From positions 166,446 through 230,445 of IMG/VR virus record IMGVR_UViG_3300044974_001280: DNA of 64,000 bases; one strand, written 5' to 3'. Both the position numbers and the translations under genes were made by a program. The notes under the pieces were generated by a model that saw only the letters and a list, made by a program, of their open reading frames with translations, had not been told where the DNA came from and did not search any database. Positions 41,208 to 58,186 of the stretch are shown one piece after another (positions within the stretch are counted from its first letter, which is position 1; each line of letters starts with the position of its first letter).

Positions 41208-41242
41208 GCTTGAAAATAAGCTCTTTAACTCAAAAAAATTCT

Positions 41243-41521: not shown

Positions 41522-41525
41522 AACT

Positions 41526-42193: not shown

Positions 42194-42683
42194 GTATTAC
42201 TATAACGATTTTATATACCCTATTAAAATGTGTATCAACTTCTTTAAGAACATTTGGATGTTCAGAAAACCCCTATATGAGTTTAAATGGTGGGATAATC
42301 ATAGTTTATTACATTTTATGAAAATAGGAATTAGTGATATGGCAAATGGTATAGAAACCAAAGGTTCGGAGGTTAATGAGACACGGCTTGTAAAAATTAC
42401 CAAAATGCGAAGGGCTATCCAAATTTTGTCTAATCACTTAGATGATTCTTATATTGAATTGGCCGAAAAAGAGTGTGGTAAATTAGTTCATAGAGAATTT
42501 AAGTTTGTTCCACTAACCGATAATTCTGAATTATTTACATTGAAAGATAACCTAACTAAAGAAGAGAGTGAACATAATTCTAAAGTATCTGAGTGTTCAC
42601 TTAAAATAGAAAACGATGAATGGGATGAACTATTTGAAATATTAAAGGATACAAACACTGGGTTGAAATCTTGGTGGGATTAA
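42186..42683 (+). CDS. Hypothetical protein
   Basis: Ends in SWWD. Confidence 0.7.
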   Translation: MVKYYYNDFIYPIKMCINFFKNIWMFRKPLYEFKWWDNHSLLHFMKIGISDMANGIETKGSEVNETRLVKITKMRRAIQILSNHLDDSYIELAEKECGKLVHREFKFVPLTDNSELFTLKDNLTKEESEHNSKVSECSLKIENDEWDELFEILKDTNTGLKSWWD

Positions 42684-42702
42684 TATTAAAAAAATAAAAA
42701 AA

Positions 42703-42915
42703 ATGAAAAAATTAGTTTATCTAGAGGATCTTTCCCTGACGGGAATCCCGATCACGAAGTTGATTTTCAAAGCCCTCCGAGAAATTCCGGACGACAAGAA
42801 AAATGAAATCCTGTCTATTTACAGGGAATTATACGAACAGACTTTATCAGATCTCCAAAAAGCCTACGAGATGGGTATTTCCGAAGGTCAAAAACAAGCC
42901 CTAAATCCCGAATAA
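42703..42915 (+). CDS. Hypothetical protein
   Basis: Co-directional ORF. Confidence 0.6.
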   Translation: MKKLVYLEDLSLTGIPITKLIFKALREIPDDKKNEILSIYRELYEQTLSDLQKAYEMGISEGQKQALNPE

Positions 42916-42917
42916 AC

Positions 42918-43169
42918 ATGCTAGAATCAACCCTCATCTCCCTGGGATTTGACAAAGATTACATGATCGATGACGAGACCGGGGAAACGTGCTGTCCCCA
43001 CTATGTGCTCAATTTTCCAGATTTTACCTTGCAGGGCCTGCCTTTCACAGACGATTCCAATTCCTGGTTTGTTATTTCTACTTTTTCTTCTCATTTAAGA
43101 ATTGAATTTGACGATGAATTGATCCAATTAGTTCATTTATTCAGAAAAAATTGCAGGACAGAGGACTAA
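42918..43169 (+). CDS. Hypothetical protein
   Basis: Co-directional ORF. Confidence 0.6.
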   Translation: MLESTLISLGFDKDYMIDDETGETCCPHYVLNFPDFTLQGLPFTDDSNSWFVISTFSSHLRIEFDDELIQLVHLFRKNCRTED

Positions 43170-43240
43170 GTAAGAAATAATCAGAATATTTCTCCTATAA
43201 GATAAATACCTTATTCAAATTCATAAAAAATAAATCCCAC

Positions 43241-43681
43241 GTGACAAATAAAAAAACAATTTACATTGGCTCGGATCATGCAGGCTATGAGCTCAAAAGT
43301 TTTATCATCGACAAGCTTCAAGAAAACGAATTCACGGTCAGAGATTTCGGTACCCATTCTGAAGAGTCAGTAGACTATCCAAACATCGCTCATTCACTGT
43401 CAGGAACCCTTTATAACAACATTGGAATTCTAATTTGTGGTTCGGGCAACGGAATGACCATGGCTGCTAATAAGTGGAATAGGTCCAGAGCAGCTTTGTG
43501 TTGGAACGAGGAAGTTTCTAGACTGGCCAGAAGCCACAACGACGCCAACATTTTATGTCTACCTGCCAGGTTTATCTCCTCCAGCGAGGCCTGGAAAATA
43601 GTAAAGACCTTCTTAGAAACTCCCTTCGAAGGGGGAAGACACGAACAAAGAGTTAATTTAATTCCTATTTTCAATGACTAA
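43241..43681 (+). CDS. rpiB: Ribose-5-phosphate isomerase B
   Basis: IGSDHAGYELK, SVDYP, GILICGSGNG, RSHNDANIL, FEGGRH..R. Confidence 0.96.
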   Translation: MTNKKTIYIGSDHAGYELKSFIIDKLQENEFTVRDFGTHSEESVDYPNIAHSLSGTLYNNIGILICGSGNGMTMAANKWNRSRAALCWNEEVSRLARSHNDANILCLPARFISSSEAWKIVKTFLETPFEGGRHEQRVNLIPIFND

Positions 43682-43958
43682 TCAGTTCAATCTCAACAAG
43701 ATCTACATTATCGGCAGATTGGTGGATCTGAAAGACGCTGCCGGATTTCCTTCTAATTTAAAGAAGATAAGGGTTGCAGAAATCACCAAGTGTTCTATTC
43801 TGTTAGAAGATCTAGATTCACCCCCGGAAACGAAAAAATTTCACAGATCACTTTTAGAAGAGATGAACAAAAATTGGAAAATAGTCGAGGTTGTGGAAGA
43901 TGCTCCGGCCCAAACTTATCCTGGTCAAGGACCCACCTACATTGCTCTAAATTCCTAA
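43674..43958 (+). CDS. Hypothetical protein
   Basis: Co-directional ORF. Confidence 0.6.
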   Translation: MTNQFNLNKIYIIGRLVDLKDAAGFPSNLKKIRVAEITKCSILLEDLDSPPETKKFHRSLLEEMNKNWKIVEVVEDAPAQTYPGQGPTYIALNS

Positions 43959-43959
43959 A

Positions 43960-44199
43960 GTGGAGAAAGAAGAAAACGTTAGATATCTTGATTTAGAAGA
44001 TGGAGTCATGGGAGAGATTCTAATTCTTACCGACACCTACCACAATTCTACCAGCACTCATTTTGAAAAAGAGTACAGGTGTTCTCTTTTAAGAGATGAT
44101 ATAAAAATTTACTTGACTTCTTTAAGTTCTTTGGAGGAATCTGAAAATTATTTAATACATTTGAAGAAAAATAAATTTATCCCTCCTGACAGTTTATAA
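43960..44199 (+). CDS. Hypothetical protein
   Basis: GTG start. Confidence 0.5.
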   Translation: MEKEENVRYLDLEDGVMGEILILTDTYHNSTSTHFEKEYRCSLLRDDIKIYLTSLSSLEESENYLIHLKKNKFIPPDSL

Positions 44200-44218
44200 C
44201 AAATTAAAACATTTTTTC

Positions 44219-44578
44219 ATGTCTCCTTTTCTGATAATTTTTATTGCTGCCGTGGTGATTACCCTACTCTGGGTAAAAGGCATAACCTACATGCACGAGA
44301 ACAACCCTGATTATAAAGGTCTAGATCTATTCAGTGAAGGTCTAGAAGTAGATCTATTAAATGACCACGAGCCCGTTACACCCTCCGAAAACCTGTATCA
44401 AGAGTATGTTCGCGTGGCCGGAGGGATGGAAGAGGTAGACTATTCACTCCACGTCGATGATCCAGTCAACAATTGCACTCGTCTGATGACCGAGCAAGAA
44501 TTCTGGGAGTGCGTTGCTAAAAATCCGGATTTCCTTTTGAAGGAGAAGATATGTCTATCACGGAGGAAAAAGATTTGA
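44219..44578 (+). CDS. Membrane-anchored hypothetical protein
   Basis: N-terminal TM; WVKGI.YM....PDYKG.DLF. Confidence 0.65.
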   Translation: MSPFLIIFIAAVVITLLWVKGITYMHENNPDYKGLDLFSEGLEVDLLNDHEPVTPSENLYQEYVRVAGGMEEVDYSLHVDDPVNNCTRLMTEQEFWECVAKNPDFLLKEKICLSRRKKI

Positions 44579-44643
44579 TAGATCTTGTCAAAGTACTGCG
44601 AATAATTTGGAAATCTTAACTACGTCCGGCATATCCAAAAAAA

Positions 44644-44925
44644 ATGATAAAATGGCTCTACAAACCCTCCGGTCAGTGTCCTATCCAGGCAGAGGGAGAA
44701 TTTTTAAACCACTATTTTTATTTTAGAGCAAGGTGGTCCACTGTTCTCATTGAATTTGCACCCTCTGAGAGACATTGGAATGACTCTGAAAACATCCACA
44801 CCTATTTTTTGTGGAAAACTGAATCCCCCATGGCCGGATGGGTACCCAAGTGGCAATGTTTGGTGCTTATTTACTGGGGATGTTTAAGATTTTTTTGGGA
44901 TCAAAAGATAAAACAAAATCTATGA
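44644..44925 (+). CDS. Hypothetical protein
   Basis: CPIQAEG...YFYFRARW. Confidence 0.7.
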   Translation: MIKWLYKPSGQCPIQAEGEFLNHYFYFRARWSTVLIEFAPSERHWNDSENIHTYFLWKTESPMAGWVPKWQCLVLIYWGCLRFFWDQKIKQNL

Positions 44926-45185
44926 AACTATACACAGAAGAACAAATGAGTATTGCAATTGCTCAAGCAAAAGCTAACCCTGAGCTAGCATATTTATTAA
45001 TGGTTACACTTAAACCCATCGAACTACCAAATGAGGATGAGATATATCACAATGCAAGTAATTGGGTATTTGATAAAAACTCAATGAAATGGTCAAACAA
45101 TGATGATACAGCAGGAGATAACCTTGGTAGTTTTATTGAGGGAGCGAAATGGATGCGTGATCAAATACAAGGAGGTAACAAATGA
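44922..45185 (+). CDS. Hypothetical protein, MKLYT..PIELP family
   Basis: ATG 44922; FIEGAKWMRDQI. Confidence 0.7.
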   Translation: MKLYTEEQMSIAIAQAKANPELAYLLMVTLKPIELPNEDEIYHNASNWVFDKNSMKWSNNDDTAGDNLGSFIEGAKWMRDQIQGGNK

Positions 45186-45421
45186 GGGTTGATTCGGAAA
45201 GTGCATTGATAAAATTCATCAATCAATTAAAGTCGGCTGGAATTGATATTCCGGAAAATTTAACATTTGAATTTGATAGCCAAGAGTTACAAATTTTTTT
45301 CAACGAATTAGCTAATCATTATTTACAACCACCATTTGACGGTGTGAATATATTTAGTCCCGATAATAACATAACGGAATTTATTTATTTCGGGCATAAA
45401 ATGAAATTAAAACAACAATGA
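45182..45421 (+). CDS. Hypothetical protein
   Basis: ATGA overlap. Confidence 0.6.
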   Translation: MRVDSESALIKFINQLKSAGIDIPENLTFEFDSQELQIFFNELANHYLQPPFDGVNIFSPDNNITEFIYFGHKMKLKQQ

Positions 45422-45651
45422 ACAACACCAAACAAAGTAGTATTTTATGGTTACAACAGGCATTAGAGACCATATTAACACACCAGCAAATCATGCAAAC
45501 AATTGGGATATTTGTACAGTCCCATGAGATGCACAAAGAGGAACACGCTGAAACTTGGAACAGCGCTATTGATGCAGTTCAAAAAGAAAAATGGGAATCC
45601 TACGAGCAATATTACAACGAAACTTTTAATTGTATAGCAAATGAAATTTGA
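45418..45651 (+). CDS. Hypothetical protein, KQSS..W / NETFN family
   Basis: Shares both ends with 47198. Confidence 0.65.
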   Translation: MNNTKQSSILWLQQALETILTHQQIMQTIGIFVQSHEMHKEEHAETWNSAIDAVQKEKWESYEQYYNETFNCIANEI

Positions 45652-45805
45652 ATTAATGCAGTATAGATGGTATCGTAAATGGAAAGGTGGGACTTATTAT
45701 CTTATTTACAATTGGGTTACTTTACCATTTTGGTGTGATAAAATGATTACATCCTGTGGTGGAAGAGCAATTAAAATAGAAAAATTTAACACAAAATTAA
45801 TATAG
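45641..45805 (+). CDS. Hypothetical protein (54 aa, not in the ORF track)
   Basis: MKFELMQYRWYRKWKGG...EKFNTKLI. Confidence 0.55.
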   Translation: MKFELMQYRWYRKWKGGTYYLIYNWVTLPFWCDKMITSCGGRAIKIEKFNTKLI

Positions 45806-45856
45806 AAAGTTTGGGTGGAATTAAAAAATAACTTATCTTTACTTTGTAATTAAAAA

Positions 45857-46495
45857 ATGAGAGTTATGTATTATCAAATTAAAGAAACCCTAACTAAAGA
45901 AGAAAATTTGGAATTGTCTAAAGCTTATGAAGATAAAGCTAAGGAATATCTAAATCAATTCAACGAACTATTGAAGAACGCTAATAAAGAATTTCCGGGC
46001 CGTACCTTTGGTTTAAGTAAAGCTAAGTTGGAAAAGTTGAAAACTCCAAATGAGGTTTATGACCGTCTGCAATCAGCGGCTCGTTCCTACTACAACACCA
46101 AATCCACTTACGAAATGCGTGAGAGAATGGTGAAAGAAAAGGAAGAGAAAGAGAAACAAGCAGAGCTCCTAAAACAACGAGAAGCTGAAAAATCTAATTT
46201 GGTCAATGAAGCTATCGCCTTTTGTTTGGTCAATGGACGAACCTTTGGTGATGGTCTTTCGGTAGAAACTGCAATCTCAATCGCCAACGATATTGCATTC
46301 CAAAAAGAAGTTGAGAAACGTAAAGTTGAAATCGGCGATGGTTACATTGGCTTTTCAGGTCAGAACTGTGAAGATGAATGTGATGGTTGGAATCCACAAT
46401 ACCACCGGTGCCAATGTGGCAATCGTAGAGTAAGTTGGACTGATGGTTATTATTCAGACTTTCGAAATATGGAAATCTACGCTGAAGCTTACTAA
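45857..46495 (+). CDS. Coiled-coil protein with a C-terminal Cys cluster
   Basis: NCEDECDGW....RCQCGNRRV. Confidence 0.75.
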   Translation: MRVMYYQIKETLTKEENLELSKAYEDKAKEYLNQFNELLKNANKEFPGRTFGLSKAKLEKLKTPNEVYDRLQSAARSYYNTKSTYEMRERMVKEKEEKEKQAELLKQREAEKSNLVNEAIAFCLVNGRTFGDGLSVETAISIANDIAFQKEVEKRKVEIGDGYIGFSGQNCEDECDGWNPQYHRCQCGNRRVSWTDGYYSDFRNMEIYAEAY

Positions 46496-46514
46496 ATTTT
46501 AACACCAAATAGAA

Positions 46515-46706
46515 ATGACACAAGAACAAAAAGAGTGGATTGATTCTGCTAACTATGAACAACTTCTTAGCACATATAGATTTGCTTCAGCTGGAGACCC
46601 TATGTTTATGGGAGAATGTGGAAAATACTATCTCGAAGTGATGCGTGAAAAGAAGCATAAACACCCCAATCCCAGCGAAGTTAGCAAACTAATAGGATGG
46701 GGATAA
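46515..46706 (+). CDS. Hypothetical protein
   Basis: Between two junction motifs. Confidence 0.7.
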   Translation: MTQEQKEWIDSANYEQLLSTYRFASAGDPMFMGECGKYYLEVMREKKHKHPNPSEVSKLIGWG

Positions 46707-46731
46707 ATCAAACCTTTAACACCAAATAAAC

Positions 46732-46962
46732 ATGAAAGAATATCTTATTACTCAAGAACAAATAGAAAAACTTGAACACTTCAAGAAAATGTTTGAATTC
46801 AATGCCCAATTAGTTCTAGACTTATGTAGTGGTGAAAGGGACGATATTGTATATGGGTTTGAACTTGGACGAATGTATTCACATCTAAGACAATGTTTTA
46901 TTGATATGATGAAACTTGAGTCTGAAATCAGAAATCAACCATTTAACACCAAAGAGAAATGA
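46732..46962 (+). CDS. Hypothetical protein
   Basis: Between two junction motifs; ends FNTKEK. Confidence 0.7.
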   Translation: MKEYLITQEQIEKLEHFKKMFEFNAQLVLDLCSGERDDIVYGFELGRMYSHLRQCFIDMMKLESEIRNQPFNTKEK

Positions 46963-47201
46963 CACCTAAAGAAAAATCAGAAGAACTTTACTACAAATAT
47001 TATCAGCTGGTCGCAGATGGACCATATCCCGAAGATAATGCTAAAAAATGTTCATTAATTGCAATTGATGAGATGATGGAGGTATATGCTTCAGCACTTC
47101 ACTCTATGGGTATTGCAAAAGATATTGCCGAATTAACACTAAGCCCATATCTTATGCAAGTAAAGCACGAAATTGAAAATCTTAAAATTGACAGTAAATG
47201 A
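46959..47201 (+). CDS. Hypothetical protein (MTPKEK family)
   Basis: AKKCSLIAIDE..VKHEI. Confidence 0.7.
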   Translation: MTPKEKSEELYYKYYQLVADGPYPEDNAKKCSLIAIDEMMEVYASALHSMGIAKDIAELTLSPYLMQVKHEIENLKIDSK

Positions 47202-47482
47202 AACAAAGTAGTATAGAGTGGTATGAACGCCAAGTCTGGGACCTGCTAATTCGATTTGAAAACAAGGAAATAACACTTGGCCAATATGGTGTTACCCGTG
47301 TTGACTTATTTAATCAAGCAAAAGAGATGCATAATAATGAGATGAATGTTAAAATCCAAAAAGCAATTGACAAATTTGAAGAAGCAAAAACCAATTCATC
47401 ATCTTTTAGAGACATAATCTACTTGGATGGTGTCTTAGCAGTTTTAGACACAATAAAAAACGAAACCTTTAACACCAAATAA
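47198..47482 (+). CDS. Hypothetical protein (MKQSS..W / NETFNTK family)
   Basis: ATGA overlap. Confidence 0.7.
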   Translation: MKQSSIEWYERQVWDLLIRFENKEITLGQYGVTRVDLFNQAKEMHNNEMNVKIQKAIDKFEEAKTNSSSFRDIIYLDGVLAVLDTIKNETFNTK

Positions 47483-47484
47483 AA

Positions 47485-47712
47485 ATGAAAATACCAACAG
47501 CAGAAGAAACATACACTAAAGTAACAGGTTGTATTATCAATCATAAAGATGTTAAAACAGCAATGATTGAATTTGCCAAACTTCATGTTGAAGCCGCTTT
47601 AAAAGCTTCTCTTGAAAGTATACCCTGTTTAGGTTCTAGTACTGATATTGCAACTTATGATGAAGTTGAAGAGGCCGTTTTAAACGCTTATCCATTAACA
47701 AATATAAAATGA
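47485..47712 (+). CDS. Hypothetical protein
   Basis: AMIEFAKLHVEAALK..AYPLTNIK. Confidence 0.7.
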   Translation: MKIPTAEETYTKVTGCIINHKDVKTAMIEFAKLHVEAALKASLESIPCLGSSTDIATYDEVEEAVLNAYPLTNIK

Positions 47713-48074
47713 ACACGCCAGTAAGTTTTGAGATAGCAAAGTTGCTAAAAGAAAAGGGATATAAATTAGATTTTGGCGATAATCAAAAATTTTATTTCCC
47801 AGACACAAGAGAATTGACTGAAAATCATAGAGGTAATAATTATCCAGCACCAACCATTGTAGAAGTAGTGATGTGGTTGTATGAGAAGCATGGGATTTGG
47901 ATTAATGGAGGATTGTATTCACATTTAGGTAATGTTTCAAAATTTCAATTTACAATCCAAAGTCAAAAATCCAGATCAACAAATTCAATAGTACAACTCA
48001 ATATCAATCCATTTAATTCACCAGCAGAAGCATACGAAGCAGCTATTGAATACACTTTAAAAAACTTGTTATGA
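47709..48074 (+). CDS. MNTPVSFE-family paralog 1
   Basis: Conserved N, middle (APTI.EVVMWLYEKHGIW) and C (EAYEAAIEYTL) blocks. Confidence 0.8.
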   Translation: MNTPVSFEIAKLLKEKGYKLDFGDNQKFYFPDTRELTENHRGNNYPAPTIVEVVMWLYEKHGIWINGGLYSHLGNVSKFQFTIQSQKSRSTNSIVQLNINPFNSPAEAYEAAIEYTLKNLL

Positions 48075-48658
48075 ACACATTAAAAAAAGAATTTGTCCCC
48101 TACGAAGAAGCATTAGCACTTAAAGAACTTGGGTTTGATGAACCTTGTTTTGGTAGTTATGATATGGAAACATTAAAATTATGGATTGGGTATTTGAATG
48201 ATGGAGAACAATTCAATAGAGAATATTATTACCCCGCACCAACATTCTCACAAGCATTTAGGTGGATTAGAGAGAAGTATAAAATAAATTCTCATGTCGG
48301 ATTTAAAGATGACGAAGACAAAGAGTTTGCATTCTATTATTACCAAATAAATTGGACAAAAGGTTTTGGTTTCCAAAGTCACGAAGAAGCAGAACTTGCT
48401 TGTCTTAGGAAGTTAATTGAAATTGTAAAAGAGAAACAAATATTAACGATAGAAGTAATCATACCCTCCGAACCATTTTATCAAAAATTTGAGCATGAGT
48501 TCAAAGTACTTCCTTCAATTTCCCTTAAAGAACGTATTTTGGGTGTTTTAGAGAACCAATCTATCGAAAGGAATGAATTTGATTATAAAATAATTGAGGA
48601 AAGAGATTGGGATGGATTAACAGAAAATTTGATAAGTTGTTTCAAACAATTTGGATGA
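48071..48658 (+). CDS. Distant relative of the MNTPVSFE family with a C-terminal extension
   Basis: FVPYEEALALKELGFDEPC, APTFSQAFRW, EEAELACL. Confidence 0.75.
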   Translation: MNTLKKEFVPYEEALALKELGFDEPCFGSYDMETLKLWIGYLNDGEQFNREYYYPAPTFSQAFRWIREKYKINSHVGFKDDEDKEFAFYYYQINWTKGFGFQSHEEAELACLRKLIEIVKEKQILTIEVIIPSEPFYQKFEHEFKVLPSISLKERILGVLENQSIERNEFDYKIIEERDWDGLTENLISCFKQFG

Positions 48659-48706
48659 TTGAAATAATTTTCGTATATTTACATCATAAATAAAAAAATA
48701 AAAGTT

Positions 48707-49447
48707 ATGCCACACAACCTAATTCACACAAAAGACTACCTGTTGGTGGTTGATGATTCAGAGATTAAAGAGGGTGATTGGTGTTTTCTTGGTGAGACTT
48801 CTCTGTTTAATGCTAAAATCGGTAGAGTCAACAAAAATGTAATCTCAGATAATGGGAAAAATGGACTTAATTTCAAAAAAATCATTGCTCATCTACCACT
48901 TAATGACTTTCCAATCCTTGAAGGTGTGGATTTGCTACCACCGCTTGAAGATGAAGTTGAAGAGTTAGCGGAAAGAGAATACAGCGAGCAGAGTCAATCA
49001 TGTGATGATGATCCAAACGAATTTTTTAATTATACTGGTTACTTAAAGGCTGGCTTTATAAATGGCTACAACAAGGCCAAAGAGAAGTACAAGTACACCA
49101 ATGAGGATATGCTTACAATTAGAAACAATTTAGTTACTCTACTTCCAACAGGAGATGTTACGGCGTGGGATATGATTCAAGCTATTTCAAAATATACTAA
49201 GTGGTTTGATAATTATGTTGAATCTTTATCACAACCCGAATTACCTACTGCGTTTGAATGTGAGATACAATATTTTTATATGTCAAGTGAATATTATTAT
49301 GGCACAGAAGCCGGTTGGGTTAAGTTTGATGAGTCTCAATATGAATCTATCAGAAAAGAAATACCTACCTGTCCTTTGAAAAAAGTACATAAGGAAACAA
49401 CAACCCCCGAAGGTCATACCCAATGGGTAGGGAAATACATTTACTAA
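48707..49447 (+). CDS. Hypothetical protein
   Basis: YLLVVDDSEIKEGDW, KKIIAHLPL. Confidence 0.75.
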   Translation: MPHNLIHTKDYLLVVDDSEIKEGDWCFLGETSLFNAKIGRVNKNVISDNGKNGLNFKKIIAHLPLNDFPILEGVDLLPPLEDEVEELAEREYSEQSQSCDDDPNEFFNYTGYLKAGFINGYNKAKEKYKYTNEDMLTIRNNLVTLLPTGDVTAWDMIQAISKYTKWFDNYVESLSQPELPTAFECEIQYFYMSSEYYYGTEAGWVKFDESQYESIRKEIPTCPLKKVHKETTTPEGHTQWVGKYIY

Positions 49448-49460
49448 ACCAAACTAAACC

Positions 49461-49721
49461 ATGAATCACCATCAATTAAACCACGCAAGAGAGCTTATGG
49501 ATAAGCTCAACAGGGCTGTCGCTGATTACGAATCCTTTGCTGCAGGAGTAAACCAACAATACACTACTCCTCAAATTACGCTTTATAACCATGGAACGAA
49601 AATTTATGAATTTAAAATCTCAAGAGAGCAAGCGTCTGCAATTATCGTGGATGAAAAAAACCGATTGAAAGAAAAAATGGAAAAAGCAAAAAAGGACTTT
49701 GAAGATTACATGCCAACCTAA
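49461..49721 (+). CDS. Hypothetical protein
   Basis: Preceded by TAAACCAAACTAA. Confidence 0.65.
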   Translation: MNHHQLNHARELMDKLNRAVADYESFAAGVNQQYTTPQITLYNHGTKIYEFKISREQASAIIVDEKNRLKEKMEKAKKDFEDYMPT

Positions 49722-50110
49722 ACCAAACTAACCTATGAAACTATACACAAAAGAATTGGATTGGGATTTTGCAATGCTCTGGGAAGCCAAAGCAAACGAA
49801 AAAAAGGAAATACACAATGAACCAAAATGGAAATGGGACTGTGGATTTAAATTGGACTTTGATGGCTCCTTGCTGTCAATTAGCAGCAGGTTTTATCCAC
49901 CACATAAAAACATTGGTAATTTTTGGGAAGGAACAGTCCAAGTGTATTTCCTTGATGATGAAATTTTGAGGAAAGAGTTTAAAACCGATACTCTTGACGA
50001 ATTAAAAGTTGAAGTCGAAAAATTTGTCAAACATTATGCAGGTGCGATTAAGGGTAGAATCGTGTAACCCAACCTAAACCAAACCAAACTATGAAACTAT
50101 ACACAAAAGA
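49714..50110 (+). repeat. ~40-nt direct repeats flanking ORF 49735
   Basis: CAACCTAAACCAAAC(T/C)AA(C/A)CTATGAAACTATACACAAAAGA at ~49714 and ~50070; partial copies at ~49445 and ~44920. Confidence 0.85.
49735..50067 (+). CDS. Hypothetical protein (MKLYTKE start)
   Basis: Flanked by direct repeats. Confidence 0.7.
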   Translation: MKLYTKELDWDFAMLWEAKANEKKEIHNEPKWKWDCGFKLDFDGSLLSISSRFYPPHKNIGNFWEGTVQVYFLDDEILRKEFKTDTLDELKVEVEKFVKHYAGAIKGRIV

Positions 50111-50465
50111 GATGTTTTTAACTGCCGCTGAAAAATGCGAGGTGTCAATGATAGACGCAAAACACATCATGCAATACATTGACGAGTATGTAACCCCTAT
50201 TGAATTGCCCACTATGAGCAATAACGAAACACACCCAGACGATTTTATTCATGGCAAATTAACCAAGCGCGAGTACTTTGCTTCTATTATGCCGGTGGAT
50301 GATTATACCTATGACACGGTTAGGCCGTTAATGGATTCAGATATTCCGCGTTCTCCTGATTTAGAAAGAATGAAATGGTGGATGCTTGTAGAGGCAAAAA
50401 TTAAAGTAATGAAAGCGGATGCACTAATTAAAGCACTAACCAATGAACACGCCAGTAAGTTTTGA
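50091..50465 (+). CDS. Chimeric hypothetical protein (MKLYT..PIELP + LTKREYFA..ADALI modules)
   Basis: N-terminal module shared with 44922. Confidence 0.7.
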   Translation: MKLYTKEMFLTAAEKCEVSMIDAKHIMQYIDEYVTPIELPTMSNNETHPDDFIHGKLTKREYFASIMPVDDYTYDTVRPLMDSDIPRSPDLERMKWWMLVEAKIKVMKADALIKALTNEHASKF

Positions 50466-50829
50466 GATAGCAAAGTTGCTAAAAGAGAAAGGGTTTGATA
50501 TACCATGTTGGAGTTATTATTCATCTTTAAATCTTTATACTTTTGAACTTGGAGATTGGAATAATCATACTATTGGAGATACATCTATGCATAAAAGAAA
50601 TGCTGGATATTACTCAGCACCAACCATTGCAGAAGTTGTGATGTGGTTGTATGAGAAACATGGGATTTGGACTGTAGTGAATGTGAACATTATGGGGTCT
50701 TGGTATTTTGAACATTTTGATTTGAAAAAGAAAAGGAATGCTGAATTTAAACCTACAGATACACACTATAATTCACCAACAGAAGCACACGAAGCGGCTA
50801 TTGAATACACGCTAAATAATTTAATATGA
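50443..50829 (+). CDS. MNTPVSFE-family paralog 2
   Basis: First 44 nt identical to 47709. Confidence 0.8.
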   Translation: MNTPVSFEIAKLLKEKGFDIPCWSYYSSLNLYTFELGDWNNHTIGDTSMHKRNAGYYSAPTIAEVVMWLYEKHGIWTVVNVNIMGSWYFEHFDLKKKRNAEFKPTDTHYNSPTEAHEAAIEYTLNNLI

Positions 50830-51260
50830 ACACTGAAGTAAATTTTGAAATTGCAAAACTCCTAAAAGAAAAAGGATTTTCTTGGGAATGTCGTCACTTT
50901 TATCGCAAAAGTAAGTACGATAAAGAATTTTATTTAACAACAGGTACAGAATATGAATCCGATAAAGATTGTATTTGGGATTGGAACTTGAATGGTGGTA
51001 AATCAGGTATGCTTTTAAAAAAAATTCCATACCCGAATGATGATAATGCAATCTACTACTCAGCACCAACCATTGCAGAAGTTGTGATGTGGTTGTATGA
51101 GAAACATGGGATTTGGATTTATGCACATAGGATAGACCAAAAAGAATTTTATTGGTCTATTGATACTGATAAAAAAGAGTTTACATCAGGAGAAAATTTC
51201 AAAACACCAACAGAAGCATACGAAGCAGCTATTGAGTACACGCTAAATAATTTAATATGA
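50826..51260 (+). CDS. MNTPVSFE-family paralog 3
   Basis: 51057-51117 identical to 50611-50671. Confidence 0.8.
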   Translation: MNTEVNFEIAKLLKEKGFSWECRHFYRKSKYDKEFYLTTGTEYESDKDCIWDWNLNGGKSGMLLKKIPYPNDDNAIYYSAPTIAEVVMWLYEKHGIWIYAHRIDQKEFYWSIDTDKKEFTSGENFKTPTEAYEAAIEYTLNNLI

Positions 51261-51529
51261 ACACACCAGTAAAATTTGAAATTGCTGAAATTCTGTTTAA
51301 AAAACATGGAGTATTATTGTCAACTATATCAGACGTAGTAATGTGGTTGTATGAGAAGCATGGGATTTGGACTGTAGTGAATGTGAACATTATGGGGTCT
51401 TGGTATTTTGAGCATTTTAATTTGAAAGAGAAGAGGAATGCTGAATTTAAACCTACAGACACACACTATGATTCACCAACAGAAGCATATGAAGCAGCTA
51501 TTGAATATACTTTAAAAAACTTGTTATGA
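51257..51529 (+). CDS. MNTPVSFE-family paralog 4
   Basis: Second variable region nearly identical to paralog 2; C-terminus matches paralog 1. Confidence 0.8.
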   Translation: MNTPVKFEIAEILFKKHGVLLSTISDVVMWLYEKHGIWTVVNVNIMGSWYFEHFNLKEKRNAEFKPTDTHYDSPTEAYEAAIEYTLKNLL

Positions 51530-51567
51530 CACACAAACTAATTCACACACAAGACTACCTATTTTGA
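51526..51567 (+). pseudogene. 5' remnant of a 48707-family gene
   Basis: MTHKLIHTQDYLF* versus MPHNLIHTKDYLL. Confidence 0.6.
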
Positions 51568-51585
51568 AAACCAAAATTAAACTCA

Positions 51586-51804
51586 ATGTTAAATTACGAA
51601 TTAGTAGAACATAGTTATAAAATTACCACCACACATGGTGGAAAATTGATAGGTTATTTTGTGCCTGATATTGATGGATTTTACTATTTTAGACCCGAAG
51701 ATGAAAAAGGGTATTGGAACGAACATGCTCTTTTAGAGTTGGGAAATAAACTCAAAGAGTTAAATCAAGATTTATACGATGAATTAAAAAAATTTGAAAA
51801 ATAA
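51586..51804 (+). CDS. Hypothetical protein
   Basis: Co-directional ORF. Confidence 0.65.
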   Translation: MLNYELVEHSYKITTTHGGKLIGYFVPDIDGFYYFRPEDEKGYWNEHALLELGNKLKELNQDLYDELKKFEK

Positions 51805-51807
51805 GTT

Positions 51808-52569
51808 ATGGAACAACAAAATTACACATTAGAACAGGCCGCCGAAAAATTTGGAAAACCGCATAAAATATTTGATATTCAAATAGGAGATAGACTTTAT
51901 CCAGTTTACTCAATTGATGGATATGAACACAATTTAGGTAAATGGAATGGGTGTCCTGATACATGGTGGTTAGACTACTCAGTTTATCATTCGGATAATG
52001 ATGATGAAGTACCAACCATGAGAGAGCTTATCCCATACATCGATACGGGTGTTCATAGAGTTTGCTGGGAAATAAATTATAGACAATTTAATTCAACCAA
52101 ATATAAGTGGGATGAGTGGAGCATCAGAAATGGTGGGATATGTACAATTAAAGCAAATGGTAAGGAAGTTTATAAATTTCATTGGAGAGATTTAGGAGGG
52201 GCATTGGCTGAAGCACATTCTTTGATAAGTAAAATATCAGAACATCCTTTTAATTTCATAAACCCAGAAAAAGAGATTGGAAGAAAAATATGGTATTATG
52301 GATTACCGGCCACAATCTTATTGGGATATGAACCCGGAGAAATTAGGATTAATCCCGATTTGAGTTATATGACATCGGATGAATGGTGGAATGAGTTGGA
52401 AAAAAGAAAATCAAATGTGAAACCACCAAACTCAACACAAAACGAAGATGATTTGCTGGATGCTGAACATTTTGCAGAACATAAAGATTATGGTTCGATA
52501 AATCATGGTAGTGTTTTTTATGATGGAATGATTAATTGGTTTAGACATGAAAAAAAAGATGATGAATAA
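51808..52569 (+). CDS. Hypothetical protein
   Basis: 253 aa ORF. Confidence 0.75.
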   Translation: MEQQNYTLEQAAEKFGKPHKIFDIQIGDRLYPVYSIDGYEHNLGKWNGCPDTWWLDYSVYHSDNDDEVPTMRELIPYIDTGVHRVCWEINYRQFNSTKYKWDEWSIRNGGICTIKANGKEVYKFHWRDLGGALAEAHSLISKISEHPFNFINPEKEIGRKIWYYGLPATILLGYEPGEIRINPDLSYMTSDEWWNELEKRKSNVKPPNSTQNEDDLLDAEHFAEHKDYGSINHGSVFYDGMINWFRHEKKDDE

Positions 52570-52672
52570 AGAAGAAATACAACACTGGATTAATCGTTGG
52601 TCAAAACTAAAAGGCCCAAGAGCAGAAGCGGTAGTAAACATTTGGAAAAAACATCTAAAACACTAGAAAGTT

Positions 52673-53128
52673 ATGAACGACAAACACAAAATGCTATATT
52701 CAGCAAACAAATTAAGAGATGTGTTATCATCAATTGAAGATATTCTCGAAGGGTATGAAGGGATAGAAGGTAATAAAAATTATGTGAAGTATTGCTATAA
52801 CAAAGCAAAAGAAGCTCACTCTGTTGATGATGAATTAGTTAAAATGACTGAAGACACTTATGCTATTGATTTATCACAACGTAGAGGTATTAATATTGCA
52901 ACATTAACACATAAACTTGAATTTATGTTTAAGTTGTTAGATGATATCGACACGGCAAGTGATATGTTTAAACCTAAATGGTGTAAAATATCTAGCGTTG
53001 TATCTCACCTTCAACAACTCAGATGGATTTATTGTACCGTTGAAACTGAAAAAAATGAAAGTGGCGATATGATAATAAATGGGGAATGTTTTAAAAAAGA
53101 AGATAGAATTTTACTCCAGTTATCTTAA
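52673..53128 (+). CDS. Hypothetical protein
   Basis: LLDDIDTASDMFKP. Confidence 0.7.
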   Translation: MNDKHKMLYSANKLRDVLSSIEDILEGYEGIEGNKNYVKYCYNKAKEAHSVDDELVKMTEDTYAIDLSQRRGINIATLTHKLEFMFKLLDDIDTASDMFKPKWCKISSVVSHLQQLRWIYCTVETEKNESGDMIINGECFKKEDRILLQLS

Positions 53129-53155
53129 CATACAACAACAAAACTATAGAAAGTC

Positions 53156-53449
53156 ATGAATAAAATAGAAATAACACCTGTACCTGAAATTGTTGCAAAT
53201 ACACAACGAGTATGTGAAATCAGATTTGATTGTTTGGTTACAATGCATGATGTGGCATACAGAAAATATGAAGGATTTTTAGGCGAAGAAAAATGGTCTA
53301 AAACACCACAATGGTTTAAAGCCAACCATAGAATAACATTAGAAGGTGTTAAGCATGCCGACCCATATGAACTTGGGATGAGAATTAAACAAATGTTCCA
53401 TCAGATGGAAGATACAATTAACAAATATGAAAATGGAATAAATTATTAA
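53156..53449 (+). CDS. Hypothetical protein
   Basis: Co-directional ORF. Confidence 0.65.
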   Translation: MNKIEITPVPEIVANTQRVCEIRFDCLVTMHDVAYRKYEGFLGEEKWSKTPQWFKANHRITLEGVKHADPYELGMRIKQMFHQMEDTINKYENGINY

Positions 53450-53453
53450 ATAT

Positions 53454-53642
53454 ATGAATAACACAAAATTTAAAGTAGGAGATAAAGCGTGGAAACCGAA
53501 AGGATATAAATTTCCTTGCACAATTGTATCCGTATTCACAACAATAAAAGGTGAAATTAGATTAGTAGCCGAAATGGATGAATATGGATTATTACACATT
53601 TTTAACGAACAACAATTAGAACATTATGAACAACCTCGATAA
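53454..53642 (+). CDS. Small SH3-like hypothetical protein
   Basis: KFKVGD...KGY.F...[15 protein letters not shown]. Confidence 0.65.
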
Positions 53643-53943
53643 ACAGTATCAATCACTACTCCAAGATATATTAGATAATGGAGTGGAAAAGAAAGATAGA
53701 ACAGGTACTGGTACTATTTCAGTATTTGGTAGACAAATCCGTCATAAAATGAGTGAAGGGTTTTCACTTCTTACAACCAAGAAAATGGCGTGGAAGTCAA
53801 TATGTACAGAATTACTTTGGTTTTTAAGAGGCGATACATCAATAGAGTATCTTCTTAAAAATGACTGTAACATTTGGACGGGGGATGCTTATCAAGCATA
53901 CCTAAAAGAATGTGAGAAGTTAAAGAAAGATGAGGAAAAATAA
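53626..53943 (+). CDS. thyA: Thymidylate synthase, N-terminal fragment
   Basis: [35 protein letters not shown]. Confidence 0.92.
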
Positions 53944-53952
53944 TGACTTTTG

Positions 53953-53986
53953 TTGGTTTTTAGATATTTATTATAAAAGAAACCAA
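53953..53986 (+). promoter_or_regulatory. Hairpin occluding the endonuclease start, with an ATATTTAT promoter-like motif in the loop
   Basis: TTGGTTT (53953-59) pairs with AAACCAA (53980-86); ATG at 53988. Confidence 0.5.
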
Positions 53987-53987
53987 A

Positions 53988-54959
53988 ATGTGTCTAAAAA
54001 CTAAAATTGAAACAACCTTGTGTGTTATAAAAAATAATGAGTATAAAATATTGTCTCAAAAATTAAGAGTAATTGAATCATCACTTAAACAGGATATTAT
54101 TGATAGTACTCAATATCTAACTATTTACAATCCTAAATTGGTTGATAGGATAAGGTATATCTTGAAAGATAGAAACTCCGTTAATACTTGCTTCCATTGT
54201 GGTAACCCAATTATTGATTTGAATAGAAAATTTTGTTCTGCAAAGTGTAATAACAATTCGGAACTAACTAAAAATAAATTTAGAGAAAGATATAATAGTT
54301 TATCGGAAACAGATAAAATCATAAGAAATAATAAAAGACGTAAAACTGTTAATGAAAAATACGGTGGTTATACTTTACAAAGTCCTGAACTAAAAAAGAA
54401 AATTAAATCAACTATGATTAAAAAATATGGTGTTGAACATTCTTTTCATAGTGATGCAATAAAACAAAAAGCGTTAAATACTTGGATTAAAAAGTATGGT
54501 GTTGACAACCCGTTTAAATCTCACAGTATAAAAGAGAAAATAAAGCAAGTATTAAAAGATAAATACGGGGTTAATAATTCCGCTAATATTAACTCGGAAA
54601 ATAGAATTGGTAATGGTATTAAAACAAAAATCGAAAGAGGATGGATAATACCTGATGAGTTTTTGTCGGATTACCAAATTTATAGAAAAAAAGTTAAACG
54701 ATTAACTGAAACAACATATAAAATGTATAAAAACATTATAAACCCAAATAATTTAGAAAGAGTAACAAATGGAAAAATTGGGTTCCAATTAGACCACAAA
54801 TACTCAATAATTGAAGGATTTTTGAATAATGTAGAACCTGAAATTATTAGTCATCACTGTAATCTACAAATGATAGAATGGAGTAGTAATAGAACTAAAA
54901 GTAAAAGATGTGATATTGATTTAGAACAATTAAAAAATGAAATAAAAAGTTATGAATAA
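53988..54959 (+). mobile_element. Free-standing HNH-type homing endonuclease inserted in thyA
   Basis: CxxC..FCS..C, KYG repeats (KYGGY, KYGVEH, KYGVDN, KYGVNN), LDHKYSI...NLQMI...N..K. Confidence 0.8.
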
Positions 54960-55752
54960 AGAACACTTACACCCAGATGGAAGACCATACACCCAAGAAG
55001 AATTCATCAACAAAATCAAAACAGATGATGAGTTTGCTAAGAAGTGGGGTGATTTGGGACCAATTTATGGTAAACAGTGGAGAAAATGGAAAACCGAAGT
55101 TGCTATTCCAACAACATTAAAAATTGATGATGGTGATGATATTGAACCCTTATATGTAAAAGGAACACAGTATATTGACCAAATCCAAAACCTAATCAAC
55201 GACCTTAAAACAAATCCTGATAGTAGGAGATTAATGGTTTCGGCTTGGAATGTAGGTGAATTAGACCAAATGGTTCTCCCACCTTGTCATTATGGATTTC
55301 AAGTTTATACAAGAGAGTTAAGTTATGAAGAACGGTGTAATATATTTCAATCAACAGAAAGATTTAAAATGGAAACCCGAGAACATATTAAAGAGTTAAA
55401 TATTAAAATAATGAATGAAGCCGAAGTTCCAACCAGAGCAATCTCTCTAATGTGGAATCAACGCTCAGTAGATACATTCTTGGGTTTACCATTCAACATT
55501 GCTTCTTATGGATTATTATTGGAAATGATTGCAGATGAAGTACAAATGATACCTGATGAATTGATTGGTAATTTAGGAGATACACATTTGTATTTAAATC
55601 ATATTGAACAAGCAAAAGAGCAAATAAAAAGAGAACCATTTAGACTACCAAATGTTCACGTTAGAGATGGTATCGAATCATTTATGCCAGGAGATATTAT
55701 TTTAGAAAATTATGTATCACATCCAACAATTAAAGCGCCCCTGTCCAATTGA
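54952..55752 (+). CDS. thyA: Thymidylate synthase, C-terminal fragment
   Basis: GDLGPIYGKQWR, PDSRRLMVSAWN, LPPCH, QRSVDTFLGLPFNIASY, GDTHLYLNH. Confidence 0.95.
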   Translation: MNKEHLHPDGRPYTQEEFINKIKTDDEFAKKWGDLGPIYGKQWRKWKTEVAIPTTLKIDDGDDIEPLYVKGTQYIDQIQNLINDLKTNPDSRRLMVSAWNVGELDQMVLPPCHYGFQVYTRELSYEERCNIFQSTERFKMETREHIKELNIKIMNEAEVPTRAISLMWNQRSVDTFLGLPFNIASYGLLLEMIADEVQMIPDELIGNLGDTHLYLNHIEQAKEQIKREPFRLPNVHVRDGIESFMPGDIILENYVSHPTIKAPLSN

Positions 55753-55823
55753 CATGAAAAATAACCTACAATTAAAACACCTTTTTCACAACTTTCATAT
55801 ATTTATACCAAAAGAAATAATAT

Positions 55824-56481
55824 ATGGCAGTTGTTTATTTACACAAAAAGAAAAATACTAATGAAGTTTTTTATGTTGGGATTGGCCTTTATGAAGAAAG
55901 AGCTTATTCTTATAGAAATAGAAACATACATTGGAAAAACGTTGTTGCTAAATATGGATATGATGTTGAAATTATTGAATCGGATATTGAATGGGAAGGT
56001 GCATGTGACACTGAAAAATATTTAATTCAAAAATATGGTAGAGATATGTTGACAAATATGACAGATGGGGGTGAGGGGTTATTCAATCCATCAGATGAAG
56101 TTAGAGAAAAGTTAAGATACGCAAGAACAGAAGAGCAAAAACAAAAATTAAGAGAATATCAAATTGGGGTAACGCAATCCGAAGAAACAATACAAAAAAG
56201 AATATCACATGGATTTCATAAATCTGATGAGTATAGATATAAAATGAGCATTGCATTATCAGGTGATAATAATCCAATGAAAAAAGGAGAGAATAGAGAA
56301 AAATTAAGGAAACCAAAACCACCAAGAACAAAAGAACATAGTAACAAAATAAGTGAAACCAAAAAAGGGAAAACCTACATGGAACAAAGGTAAAACTTTA
56401 GAAAAATTTGTTTGTGATATTTGTAGCAAACAAATTGGTGGGTATGGTAATCTAGTACAACACAAAAAGAAACATTTATGA
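55824..56481 (+). mobile_element. GIY-YIG/NUMOD3 homing endonuclease with a 1-nt frameshift near 56365
   Basis: VYLH..FYVGIG..RA, LTNMTDGGEG, NUMOD3 repeats; the +1 frame continues GKPTWNKGK..CDIC..HKKKHL*. Confidence 0.8.
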
Positions 56482-56498
56482 AATTAAAAATATAATTT

Positions 56499-57062
56499 AT
56501 GAAATCAAATTTAACAGAAAAACTACTATCAATCTGCGGAAGTGCAGATAAAACTTATGGTTATAATGATATTGAATCGATAACTAAACTATCAGAAGAA
56601 CAACGTATTCAAGTAGAAGCAGAACTAATTAAACATTTTGAGTTTGATAAGATTATATGGATGGAATTACCTTCAGGTCTTACTGAAGACAAGACAACTC
56701 CCATTGTTGCGAAATCTATTAAAATATCAGATTCCGAAAATCCAACTTATAAACATAAAGTAGGATATGTTTATACTATATCATTTACTCCAAAAATATA
56801 CGAACCAGAAGAGATGTATAAGCCAGTAAAAGATGGGTGTGTGTTTGCACCTATAACATTTAACCCAGAAACCTTTGAACCAAAACAAAGTATAACATTA
56901 ACTTGGTCACCTGAGTTTCCTCAAGATATTGACGCGCCTAAAAGAACATATGAAGATGATAAACAAATGATTCGTAATATGTTAGAAAGAGTATTAGATA
57001 ATCCTGAAGAGTATAGACCTATGGGATATACTGGGTGTACATTACGATATGCGGTACTATAA
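56499..57062 (+). CDS. Hypothetical protein
   Basis: 187 aa ORF. Confidence 0.7.
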   Translation: MKSNLTEKLLSICGSADKTYGYNDIESITKLSEEQRIQVEAELIKHFEFDKIIWMELPSGLTEDKTTPIVAKSIKISDSENPTYKHKVGYVYTISFTPKIYEPEEMYKPVKDGCVFAPITFNPETFEPKQSITLTWSPEFPQDIDAPKRTYEDDKQMIRNMLERVLDNPEEYRPMGYTGCTLRYAVL

Positions 57063-57092
57063 TCACATCCAGCAATTAAAAAAATATAAGTT

Positions 57093-58174: not shown

Positions 58175-58186
58175 ATCTTTTGAATT

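What the first reader, a model, noticed from the sequence alone, without database searches (positions are those of the whole stretch)
47709..51567. Paralog family built from constant blocks and swapped variable segments
Seen: four genes share N, middle and C blocks with unrelated variable regions, and different pairs share different blocks. 47709 and 50443 share the first 44 nt; 50443 and 50826 share 61 nt in the middle and the YTLNNLI end; 50443 and 51257 share the second variable region; 47709 and 51257 share the YTLKNLL end. A 5' remnant of the 48707 family follows. Inference: recombination between constant blocks generates a combinatorial repertoire of small early proteins, for example anti-defence or host-takeover binders with a fixed scaffold and variable loops.
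Basis: partly seen in the sequence, partly recalled or inferred. Interest (0 to 1): 0.72.

Follow-up and report, generated by a model that had tools for sequence, protein, structure and literature searches.

The report
Cassette-swapping small phage protein family
A freshwater jumbo phage carries five copies of a small, uncharacterised protein built from three near-constant helices and two highly variable segments, and related phages swap those segments independently by recombining inside the constant helices; what the proteins bind is still unknown.

Summary
The two segments between the blocks are no more alike than random sequence. Different gene pairs share different blocks: 32 informative sites switch tree only 5 times against 17.9 expected (0 of 200,000 shuffles). 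An independent assembly has the same layout, so it is not a misassembly.

The window is the end of a 230-kb lake-metagenome phage. The family matches phrog_12005 and no Pfam family. It has 7,220 clusters at 50% identity and often occurs as arrays.

The first variable segment of gene 50443 occurs, 97-100% identical, with at least five unrelated second segments. Its second segment occurs with 43 first-segment types. Identity in the two segments is uncorrelated (r = -0.01). One natural chimera crosses over within 16 nt of the middle block.

AlphaFold models put the constant blocks in three helices and the variable parts in beta-strands and loops, with a fold like phage "ABA sandwich" proteins. 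A homodimer model passed its controls.

Recombination and a fixed scaffold are supported. "Early" and "anti-defence" are untested. The closest analogue is the gp38 adhesin design.

The parts
47709..48074 (+). Gene A, 121 aa, type I member. N block 47709-47762, variable segment V1 47763-47846, middle block M 47847-47900, variable segment V2 47901-48017, C block 48018-48071.
   Evidence: ORF. phrog_12005 E 8e-5. Block borders from hmmalign. AlphaFold model m2c32305965f9 has helices at 7-15, 50-61 and 105-120.
48071..48658 (+). Gene B, 195 aa, diverged type II member with a 70-aa C-terminal extension.
   Evidence: Aligns with the family. phrog_12005 E 4.5e-7. B-like genes lie next to type I genes in L006, L009, L098 and L101. 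It is replaced by a 143-aa variant in the near-identical relative L017.
48707..49447 (+). Gene F, 246 aa, acidic, function unknown. It is not a family member. It is the gene whose 5' remnant follows gene E.
   Evidence: Repeat D8. Homologs lie downstream of arrays in L026 (51% aa) and L025 (34% aa). No family hit.
50443..50829 (+). Gene C, 128 aa, type I member. N 50443-50496, V1 50497-50616, M 50617-50670, V2 50671-50772, C block 50773-50826.
   Evidence: ORF. phrog_12005 E 5.7e-10. AlphaFold model m09e2f6a2f704, pLDDT 83.9. Homodimer model score 0.60 against a best control of 0.01.
50826..51260 (+). Gene D, 144 aa, type I member. N 50826-50879, V1 50880-51062, M 51063-51116, V2 51117-51203, C block 51204-51257. 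Its start overlaps the stop of gene C (ATGA).
   Evidence: ORF. phrog_12005 E 2.6e-10. M block 61/62 identical to gene C. Its V1 recurs joined to the V2 type of genes C and E in P0017 / L098.
51257..51529 (+). Gene E, 90 aa, short form without a V1 cassette. N 51257-51301, M 51317-51370, V2 51371-51472, C block 51473-51526.
   Evidence: ORF. V2 92/97 nt identical to gene C. Short forms of 90-92 aa are conserved on contigs up to 33 kb (P0054, P0057-P0063).
51526..51567 (+). 13-codon 5' remnant of an F-type gene (MTHKLIHTQDYLF, then a stop).
   Evidence: 84% identical over 50 nt to 48695-48744. Sequence read directly. Conserved at 98.7% in contig L097.
50611..50671 (+). Exact 61-nt run of the middle constant block, shared with gene D (51057-51117). 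It is a mapped natural crossover zone.
   Evidence: In contig L096 the switch from gene-C-like to gene-A-like sequence lies within 16 nt at the start of this block. k=31 contigs from four metagenomes end at these blocks.

Best explanation
These genes belong to a very large, uncharacterised family of small, acidic, soluble phage proteins (90-195 aa).

Build. The proteins have three conserved helices (blocks N, M and C) that hold two variable cassettes, V1 and V2. The cassettes supply the beta-strands and loops.

Diversification. The family diversifies mainly by ordinary homologous recombination, not by point mutation. Crossovers fall inside the roughly 54-nt helix-coding blocks. As a result, V1 and V2 cassettes move independently between paralogs and between co-infecting phages. 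The phage population therefore holds a combinatorial set of V1 x V2 proteins, and each phage carries one to six of them in a region of small accessory genes.

Shown:
- the block structure;
- the conflicting trees within the window;
- independent assortment of the cassettes across many contigs;
- one crossover mapped to within 16 nt of the M block;
- moderate purifying selection on shared cassettes.

Inferred:
- the constant helices are both the structural core and the landing sites for recombination;
- the variable sheet and loops are a binding surface aimed at variable host or competitor molecules (my estimate about 0.35 for an anti-defence or host-takeover role);
- the proteins form dimers through the M helix and the first V2 strand.
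For: Within the window:
- Block-wise identities and clustered informative sites: 5 tree switches against 17.9 expected, 0 of 200,000 shuffles.

Not an assembly artefact:
- The same layout is found in the independent assembly L017 and in a 100% identical assembly, L008/L011/L012/L018.
- Every cassette is present 100% identical in four lake runs from 2020-2024.
- The key chimeras come from k=141 contigs, whose words span the 54-nt block with flanks on both sides.

Population-level shuffling:
- The V1 of gene C (40 aa, 97-100% identical) is joined to at least five unrelated V2 cassettes (P0005, P0006, P0007, P0008, P0011).
- P0006 combines the V1 of gene C with the V2 of gene A. P0017 combines the V1 of gene D with the V2 type of genes C and E.
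- One V1 type occurs with 19 V2 types, and one V2 type with 43 V1 types.
- There are five four-gamete squares, and V1 and V2 identity are uncorrelated (r = -0.014 over 8,778 pairs).
- The same holds on contigs of 14-98 kb: P0056, P0067, P0068 and P0071 share one V1 and have four different V2.
- Among viral-contig DNA (IMG/VR loci plus three fetched contigs), 13 pairs share one cassette at 85% nt identity or more while the other is at random level. Only 2 pairs share both.
- Some pairs of loci share only a roughly 220-nt half-gene within 8 kb.

Breakpoints:
- In L096, 13 of 13 discriminating sites are gene-C-like up to 3 nt before GCACCAACCATTG. From 13 nt after its start, 30 of 31 are gene-A-like.
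- The only divergent tract between the window and L017 (48043-48943) begins in the C block of gene A and the N block of gene B.

Structure:
- Two AlphaFold models place the constant blocks in helices and the cassettes in strands and loops.
- Fold match to "Phage ABA sandwich domain" proteins, TM 0.77/0.81, E 2e-6.
- Homodimer model score 0.60, best of 3 controls 0.01. That mark was reached by 20 of 30 solved homodimers and 1 of 23 solved monomers. The counts hold only roughly, because my own alignment was used.

Selection, size and context:
- Pooled pN/pS is 0.36 within shared cassettes.
- The family has 7,220 clusters at E <= 1e-3. Among 150 representatives, median aa identity is 0.72 (N), 0.83 (M) and 0.67 (C), against 0.18 (V1) and 0.19 (V2).
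- The genes sit in co-directional runs of small genes with no family match, here and in other phages.
Against: - Nothing shows what the proteins bind, when they are made, or that they are made at all.
- Paralogs within one array are hardly more alike in their constant blocks than members from different phages (M block 0.667 against 0.611 nt identity). Exchange inside an array is therefore not frequent.
- High conservation of the helices may be purely structural rather than selected to allow recombination.
- The first homolog set was chosen by similarity to gene C. That favours sequences sharing one cassette with it and biases the correlation downward.
- Some short contigs come from k=31 assemblies that could in principle be chimeric.
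- No recombinase was found in the record, which is 85% complete (RecA model).
- The dimer and the fold are predictions.
Confidence: 0.72

Rival explanations
1. Tandem duplicates that diverged in place. The loops evolved very fast under diversifying selection or relaxed constraint while the helices stayed fixed, with no exchange of segments.
For: The variable regions of most paralog pairs are unalignable, while the helices are 67-83% identical across the family. Paralogs within arrays are old and diverged.
Against: This cannot explain cassettes that are 94-100% identical at nucleotide level while sitting beside unrelated partner cassettes. It also cannot explain the four-gamete squares or the clean single crossover in L096. 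Synonymous divergence of constant blocks between the same two genes ranges from 0 of 10.7 sites to 7 of 10.5 sites.
Confidence: 0.05
2. Neutral mosaicism. Recombination at conserved stretches is real, but it is only the ordinary by-product of phage recombination. The variable segments would then be tolerant filler with no recognition role.
For: Fragment shuffling is common in phage proteins (own knowledge: Smug et al. 2023, whose title is cited by the papers found). No function is known for the family. V1 can be absent altogether, as in gene E, and is modelled as disordered in gene A.
Against: Shared cassettes show purifying selection (pooled pN/pS 0.36). Individual cassette types are kept nearly unchanged across dozens of scaffolds; the V2 type of genes C and E is an example. 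The family is retained in multiple copies in many large phages: 30 of 76 loci have two or more members.
Confidence: 0.2
3. A programmed diversification device inside one genome: a diversity-generating retroelement, an invertible shufflon, or expression-site and silent-cassette gene conversion.
For: The array holds several members with shared flanking blocks. Superficially this resembles cassette systems.
Against: - No reverse transcriptase in the record.
- No significant inverted repeats, and all genes point the same way.
- All copies are intact genes, not silent fragments.
- The cassettes differ as whole units, not by adenine-specific changes.
- The layout is the same in two further assemblies, and the segments are unchanged in lake samples from 2020 to 2024.
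Confidence: 0.03
4. The mosaic in the window is a misassembly of several strains.
For: k=31 contigs break at every constant block, so short-word graphs cannot link the cassettes.
Against: Two other viral-contig assemblies give the same order. One of them has independent differences elsewhere. The longest exact repeat is 61 nt, shorter than a read.
Confidence: 0.02

Closest known systems
gp38 adhesin of T2/T6-type phages: glycine-rich conserved motifs separating hypervariable segments (PMC3157838)
   Same: Both are small proteins in which short, highly conserved motifs form the structural core and separate several hypervariable segments. In both, the segments are described as easily interchanged by recombination between the motifs. 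The logic is the same: fixed frame, swappable specificity pieces.
   Different: There is no sequence or fold relation. gp38 is a virion adhesin next to tail-fibre genes, and its motifs are glycine-rich. Here the frame is three helices. The genes lie among small accessory genes, usually in several copies, and the target is unknown.
PeSL promoter / stem-loop cassettes that mediate modular shuffling in hyperplastic regions of T4-type phages (PMC2839356, PMC4122927)
   Same: Short conserved sequences repeated within a region of small accessory genes serve as recombination sites that swap what lies between them.
   Different: PeSLs are intergenic regulatory motifs that swap whole genes. Here the repeats are coding blocks inside one gene and swap parts of a protein. 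A PeSL-like case may exist beside the array: genes 49735 and 50091 share 42 nt of upstream sequence plus their first codons.
Phage ABA sandwich domain proteins (PF18066) and P22 NinX / DUF2591 (PF10765)
   Same: The predicted fold matches AlphaFold DB clusters named "Phage ABA sandwich domain-containing protein" (TM 0.77/0.81, E 2.2e-6) and, more weakly, a DUF2591 protein (TM 0.53). Those are also small phage proteins of unknown function.
   Different: Neither Pfam model matches the proteins or any frame of the genome. A cassette architecture is not described for those families, as far as I could find.
phrog_12005 (and phrog_25117), PHROG families of unknown function
   Same: Genes A, B, C and D match phrog_12005 over their full length (E 8e-5 to 2.6e-10).
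   Different: The PHROG entry carries no function. Gene E (the short form) does not match.
Diversity-generating retroelement targets and bacterial antigenic-variation cassettes (pilE/pilS, vlsE; own knowledge)
   Same: Variable segments sit within a constant frame, and recombination or templated exchange creates the variety.
   Different: There is no reverse transcriptase, no template repeat and no silent cassette store. The variety is spread over the phage population rather than generated within one genome.

Membership tests
phrog_12005 | Significant full-length match to the family profile | tested here: met
   A 8e-5, B 4.5e-7, C 5.7e-10, D 2.6e-10. E has no match.
Phage_ABA_S (PF18066) | Match to the Pfam model above its cut-off (27 bits) | tested here: not met
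   No hit for the five proteins, for 60 family members or for the six-frame genome at E <= 10.
Phage_ABA_S (PF18066) | Alpha-beta-alpha sandwich fold | tested here: met
   The model of gene C matches AlphaFold DB clusters of that name at TM 0.77/0.81, E 2.2e-6, with further hits at E up to 5.5e-3. Both sides are predictions.
Phage_P22_NinX / DUF2591 (PF10765) | Match to the Pfam model | tested here: not met
   No hit in the genome at E <= 10. Fold similarity is only weak (TM 0.53).
Double-stranded RNA-binding domain | Alpha-beta-beta-beta-alpha fold with basic RNA-contact motifs | tested here: inconclusive
   Residues 60-128 align to many such domains, but only at Z 3.8-5.5 or Foldseek E >= 0.24. 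There is no Pfam match. The proteins are acidic (family median pI 5.3), which argues against RNA binding.
Diversity-generating retroelement target | Reverse transcriptase plus template and variable repeat pair | tested here: not met
   No RVT_1 match in the record. Cassettes differ as whole units.
Shufflon / invertible cassette system | Inverted recombination sites and a site-specific recombinase | tested here: not met
   Only four short AT-rich inverted matches of 17-19 nt. All genes are co-directional. No recombinase was seen among the neighbours that were scanned.
Motif-delimited recombining specificity protein (gp38-like design) | Conserved motifs delimit hypervariable segments, and natural recombinants break in the motifs | tested here: met
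   This is a likeness of design only, not of sequence.
Anti-defence / host-takeover early protein | Early expression and a demonstrated host target | not testable with these tools
   No expression data were laid on the region. The promoter scan shows no enrichment. No annotated relative was found.

The most novel reading that the evidence does not exclude
The family is a two-cassette recognition system for the inside of the cell.
- V2 lies in the predicted dimer interface and would act as a pairing code. It would decide which family members pair, including short forms without V1 such as gene E, which carries the same V2 type as gene C.
- V1 would recognise a variable host or rival target.
- The three helix-coding blocks would be conserved partly because they let phages trade cassettes.

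This would be an intracellular counterpart of tail-fibre adhesin shuffling.
Probability: 0.15. Interest if true: 0.85.

Novelty: new variant of a known kind. Interest (0 to 1): 0.64.

Why it matters
Exchange of gene parts is well documented for phage receptor-binding proteins. Much less is known about how the mass of small accessory genes in large phages evolves.

This is a very large family: 7,220 clusters at 50% identity, with no Pfam family and no named function. Its two variable parts assort almost freely around an invariant frame. That is the signature expected of a molecule tracking variable targets.

The family offers three things:
- a natural scaffold with well over a hundred types of each cassette (134 V1 and 128 V2 types among only 150 representatives);
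- a clean system for measuring recombination at short homologies in wild phage populations;
- a well-defined set of candidates for partner screens in Flavobacterium-type phage-host pairs.

Tried and rejected
- **Named families.** Pfam, NCBIfam and PDB sequence searches gave nothing meaningful.
- **Solved structures.** Foldseek and VIA-align against solved structures gave only weak matches to double-stranded RNA-binding domains and small inhibitor proteins (Z <= 5.5). I do not read a function from them.
- **Internal duplication.** The idea that the protein is a duplicated helix-hairpin unit failed (hhalign probability 0.3%).
- **Concerted evolution.** Support within arrays is weak (M block 0.667 against 0.611).
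- **Recombinase and reverse transcriptase.** The RecA and reverse-transcriptase models found nothing in the record.
- **RNA families and signals.** Rfam found nothing in 44000-58000. Promoter-like and terminator-like sites are not enriched.
- **tRNA genes.** None in the window.
- **Cultured phages.** They hold only three distant homologs, at 31-35% identity.
- **Literature.** Searches for "ABA sandwich", DUF2591 and expanded jumbo-phage families found nothing on this family.
- **Gene F.** The protein atlas gave no lead.
- **Metagenome contigs.** The runs are stored as k=31 contigs. They confirm that each cassette is present, but they cannot link cassettes or reveal rare variants.


Full report
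**Setting**

The window is the last 64 kb of a 230,445-bp linear virus record, estimated 85% complete. G+C is about 35%. Fifteen freshwater or lake DNA runs hold at least 92% of the sampled words of 47000-52000.

The nearest cultured relatives of a conserved exonuclease are mostly Flavobacterium and Cellulophaga phages (weak DNA hits). A Bacteroidota host is therefore likely, but this is an inference.

Recognisable genes in the window are two RNA ligases, an SbcD-like exonuclease, two endolysins and a split thymidylate synthase. They are separated by long co-directional runs of small genes with no family match.

**The observation**

Four genes share three blocks: A (47709-48074), C (50443-50829), D (50826-51260) and E (51257-51529). 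I call the blocks N, M and C. The two segments between them, V1 and V2, are 34-49% identical at nucleotide level in most pairs, which is random level.

- A and C are identical for 44 nt from the start codon.
- C and D share an exact 61-nt run in M and the last 15 nt.
- C and E share V2 (92/97 nt).
- A and E share the last 15 nt.
- A 13-codon frame after E is 84% identical over 50 nt to the start of gene 48707.

The 32 informative sites support three different trees in four contiguous runs. That is five switches against 17.9 expected, and none of 200,000 shuffles reached so few.

A fifth, diverged member, B (48071-48658), follows A directly. The whole record has only these five members.

**Not a misassembly**

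One viral contig is 100% identical across 39600-58553. Another, from a different metagenome (L017), is 97.8-99.5% identical and has the same order of A, B, C, D and E.

L017 differs from the window only in one tract, 48043-48943. That tract begins in the C block of A and the N block of B and ends inside gene 48707. It is itself a replacement bounded on its left side by constant blocks.

In four lake runs (2020-2024), k=31 contigs carry every cassette without a single difference. They end exactly at the constant blocks, as repeats of 31 nt or more must make them do.

**The family**

- A, B, C and D match phrog_12005, a family of unknown function.
- Nothing matches in Pfam, NCBIfam or PDB sequences.
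- A word-based search found more than 2,000 homologs, all unnamed.
- A profile search of 1.84 billion representatives found 7,220 clusters at E <= 1e-3 and 1,453 at E <= 1e-10.
- Of 76 viral loci with a member, 30 have two to six members within about 8 kb.
- The neighbourhoods are again runs of small unnamed genes.
- B-like (type II) and A/C/D-like (type I) members often sit side by side.

**Cassettes assort independently**

I split 143 homologs into blocks with a family profile.

- C's V1 (40 aa) recurs at 97-100% identity joined to at least five unrelated V2 cassettes.
- P0006 is C's V1 joined to A's V2.
- P0017 is D's V1 joined to the V2 type of C and E.
- That V2 type is joined to 43 V1 types, including none in the E-like short forms.
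- One V1 type is joined to 19 V2 types.
- There are five four-gamete squares.
- V1 and V2 identity are uncorrelated (r = -0.014, 8,778 pairs).

This set was chosen by similarity to C, which biases it. But the pattern holds in three other data sets:
- On contigs of 14-98 kb, one V1 at 97-100% identity occurs with four different V2.
- Among 121 distinct genes with DNA from viral contigs, 13 pairs share one cassette at 85% nt identity or more while the other is at random level, against 2 pairs sharing both.
- Among 150 profile-chosen representatives there are 134 V1 types and 128 V2 types. Median amino-acid identity is 0.72, 0.83 and 0.67 for N, M and C, against 0.18 and 0.19 for V1 and V2.

Some pairs of loci share nothing in 8 kb except a half-gene of about 220 nt.

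**Where the crossovers lie**

- Contig L096 (k=141 assembly) is 100% identical to C through N and V1, and 93-100% identical to A from M onward.
- All 13 discriminating sites up to 3 nt before GCACCAACCATTG are C-like. From 13 nt after its start, 30 of 31 are A-like. This is a single crossover within 16 nt at the start of the M block.
- A 141-nt word spans the 54-nt block with flanks on both sides, so this junction existed on single reads.
- L097 and L098 show further combinations and different neighbours.

**Selection**

Within shared cassettes the pooled pN/pS is 0.36. The counts are small, so I read this as moderate purifying selection.

Synonymous differences in constant blocks between window paralogs range from 0 of 10.7 sites (M block, C-D) to 7 of 10.5 sites (N block, C-D). 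This fits a patchwork of ages.

Constant blocks of paralogs within one array are only slightly more alike than those from different phages. Arrays are therefore old, and exchange is not a rapid within-genome process.

**Structure**

- The AlphaFold model of C (pLDDT 83.9, pTM 0.79) has helices at 7-15, 62-73 and 112-127. These are the three constant blocks. Strands at 22-37, 56-58, 75-81 and 87-93 come from the cassettes, and confidence is low in the cassette loops.
- The model of A has the same three helices and a three-stranded V2, but an unmodelled V1.
- The best fold matches are AlphaFold DB clusters named "Phage ABA sandwich domain" (TM 0.77/0.81) and unnamed viral clusters. The Pfam models PF18066 and PF10765 do not match.
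- Matches to solved structures are weak.
- The proteins are acidic and rich in aromatic residues.
- A homodimer model of C scored 0.60 against a best control of 0.01. That mark was reached by 20 of 30 solved homodimers and 1 of 23 solved monomers, and the counts hold only roughly here because my own alignment was used.
- The predicted interface uses the M helix (residues 61-70 and 76) and V2 (residues 78-85 and 92-100). This supports pairing; it does not show it.

**Mechanism**

No reverse transcriptase, no inverted repeats and no silent cassettes are present. A programmed device is therefore unlikely.

The simplest account is general homologous recombination at short conserved coding blocks during mixed infection, plus occasional exchange between paralogs. 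Selection then keeps many cassette combinations.

The segmental history of the window fits this account. E ends like A and is followed by the stump of an F-type gene, as if an A-B-F unit had been copied and then trimmed.

**Known analogues**

The nearest analogue in design is the gp38 adhesin, with conserved glycine-rich motifs between hypervariable segments (PMC3157838). For the region as a whole, the nearest are the PeSL motifs of T4-type hyperplastic regions (PMC2839356, PMC4122927).

Neither is related in sequence, and no paper on this family was found.

**Verdict**

The recombination and fixed-scaffold parts of the interpretation are supported. The early-expression and anti-defence parts remain open.

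Noticed in passing
window 53626-55752: Thymidylate synthase is split. ORF 53626-53943 covers Pfam positions 1-90 and ORF 54952-55752 covers positions 76-265. A homing-endonuclease-like ORF (53988-54959) lies between them. No group I intron model reached its threshold.
   Followed up: partly
window 49713-49754 and 50069-50110; also 49444-49465: Genes 49735 and 50091 share 42 nt (95%) covering the upstream region and their first seven codons (MKLYTKE) but are otherwise unrelated. The motif CTAAACCAAAC lies just upstream of three start codons. With one mismatch allowed it has 6 matches in the window against 1.9 expected. It may be a regulatory or recombination motif.
   Followed up: partly
window 48043-48943 versus L017: A near-identical phage from another metagenome differs only in this tract of about 0.9 kb: the end of gene A, all of gene B (143 aa instead of 195 aa) and the first third of gene 48707 (84% aa overall).
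   Followed up: yes
window 48050-48500: In four lake metagenomes gene B shows 2-8 times the local depth and many alternative joints. Many other phages in the same lakes therefore seem to carry B-like sequences.
   Followed up: no
L097 (1,412-nt contig): In a relative, a single family gene sits directly between a homolog of window gene 39650-40342 (89% nt) and the sequence downstream of gene E (98.7% nt). That gene has C's N and V1 blocks, a new V2 and E's end. About 10 kb of the window's small genes are therefore absent or moved there.
   Followed up: partly
L006, L009, L098, L101 and window 47709-48658: Type I and B-like type II members recur as adjacent pairs in different phages. This may mean the two types work together.
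   Followed up: no
window 50309-50340: In three of the four runs laid, contigs join this roughly 31-nt stretch to other sequence on both sides, and local depth doubles. A short repeat is apparently shared with another genome.
   Followed up: no
model of window 50443-50826: An ESM Atlas cluster of 272-aa phage proteins with an HNH_3 nuclease domain contains a part with the same fold (TM 0.56 over 87 residues).
   Followed up: no
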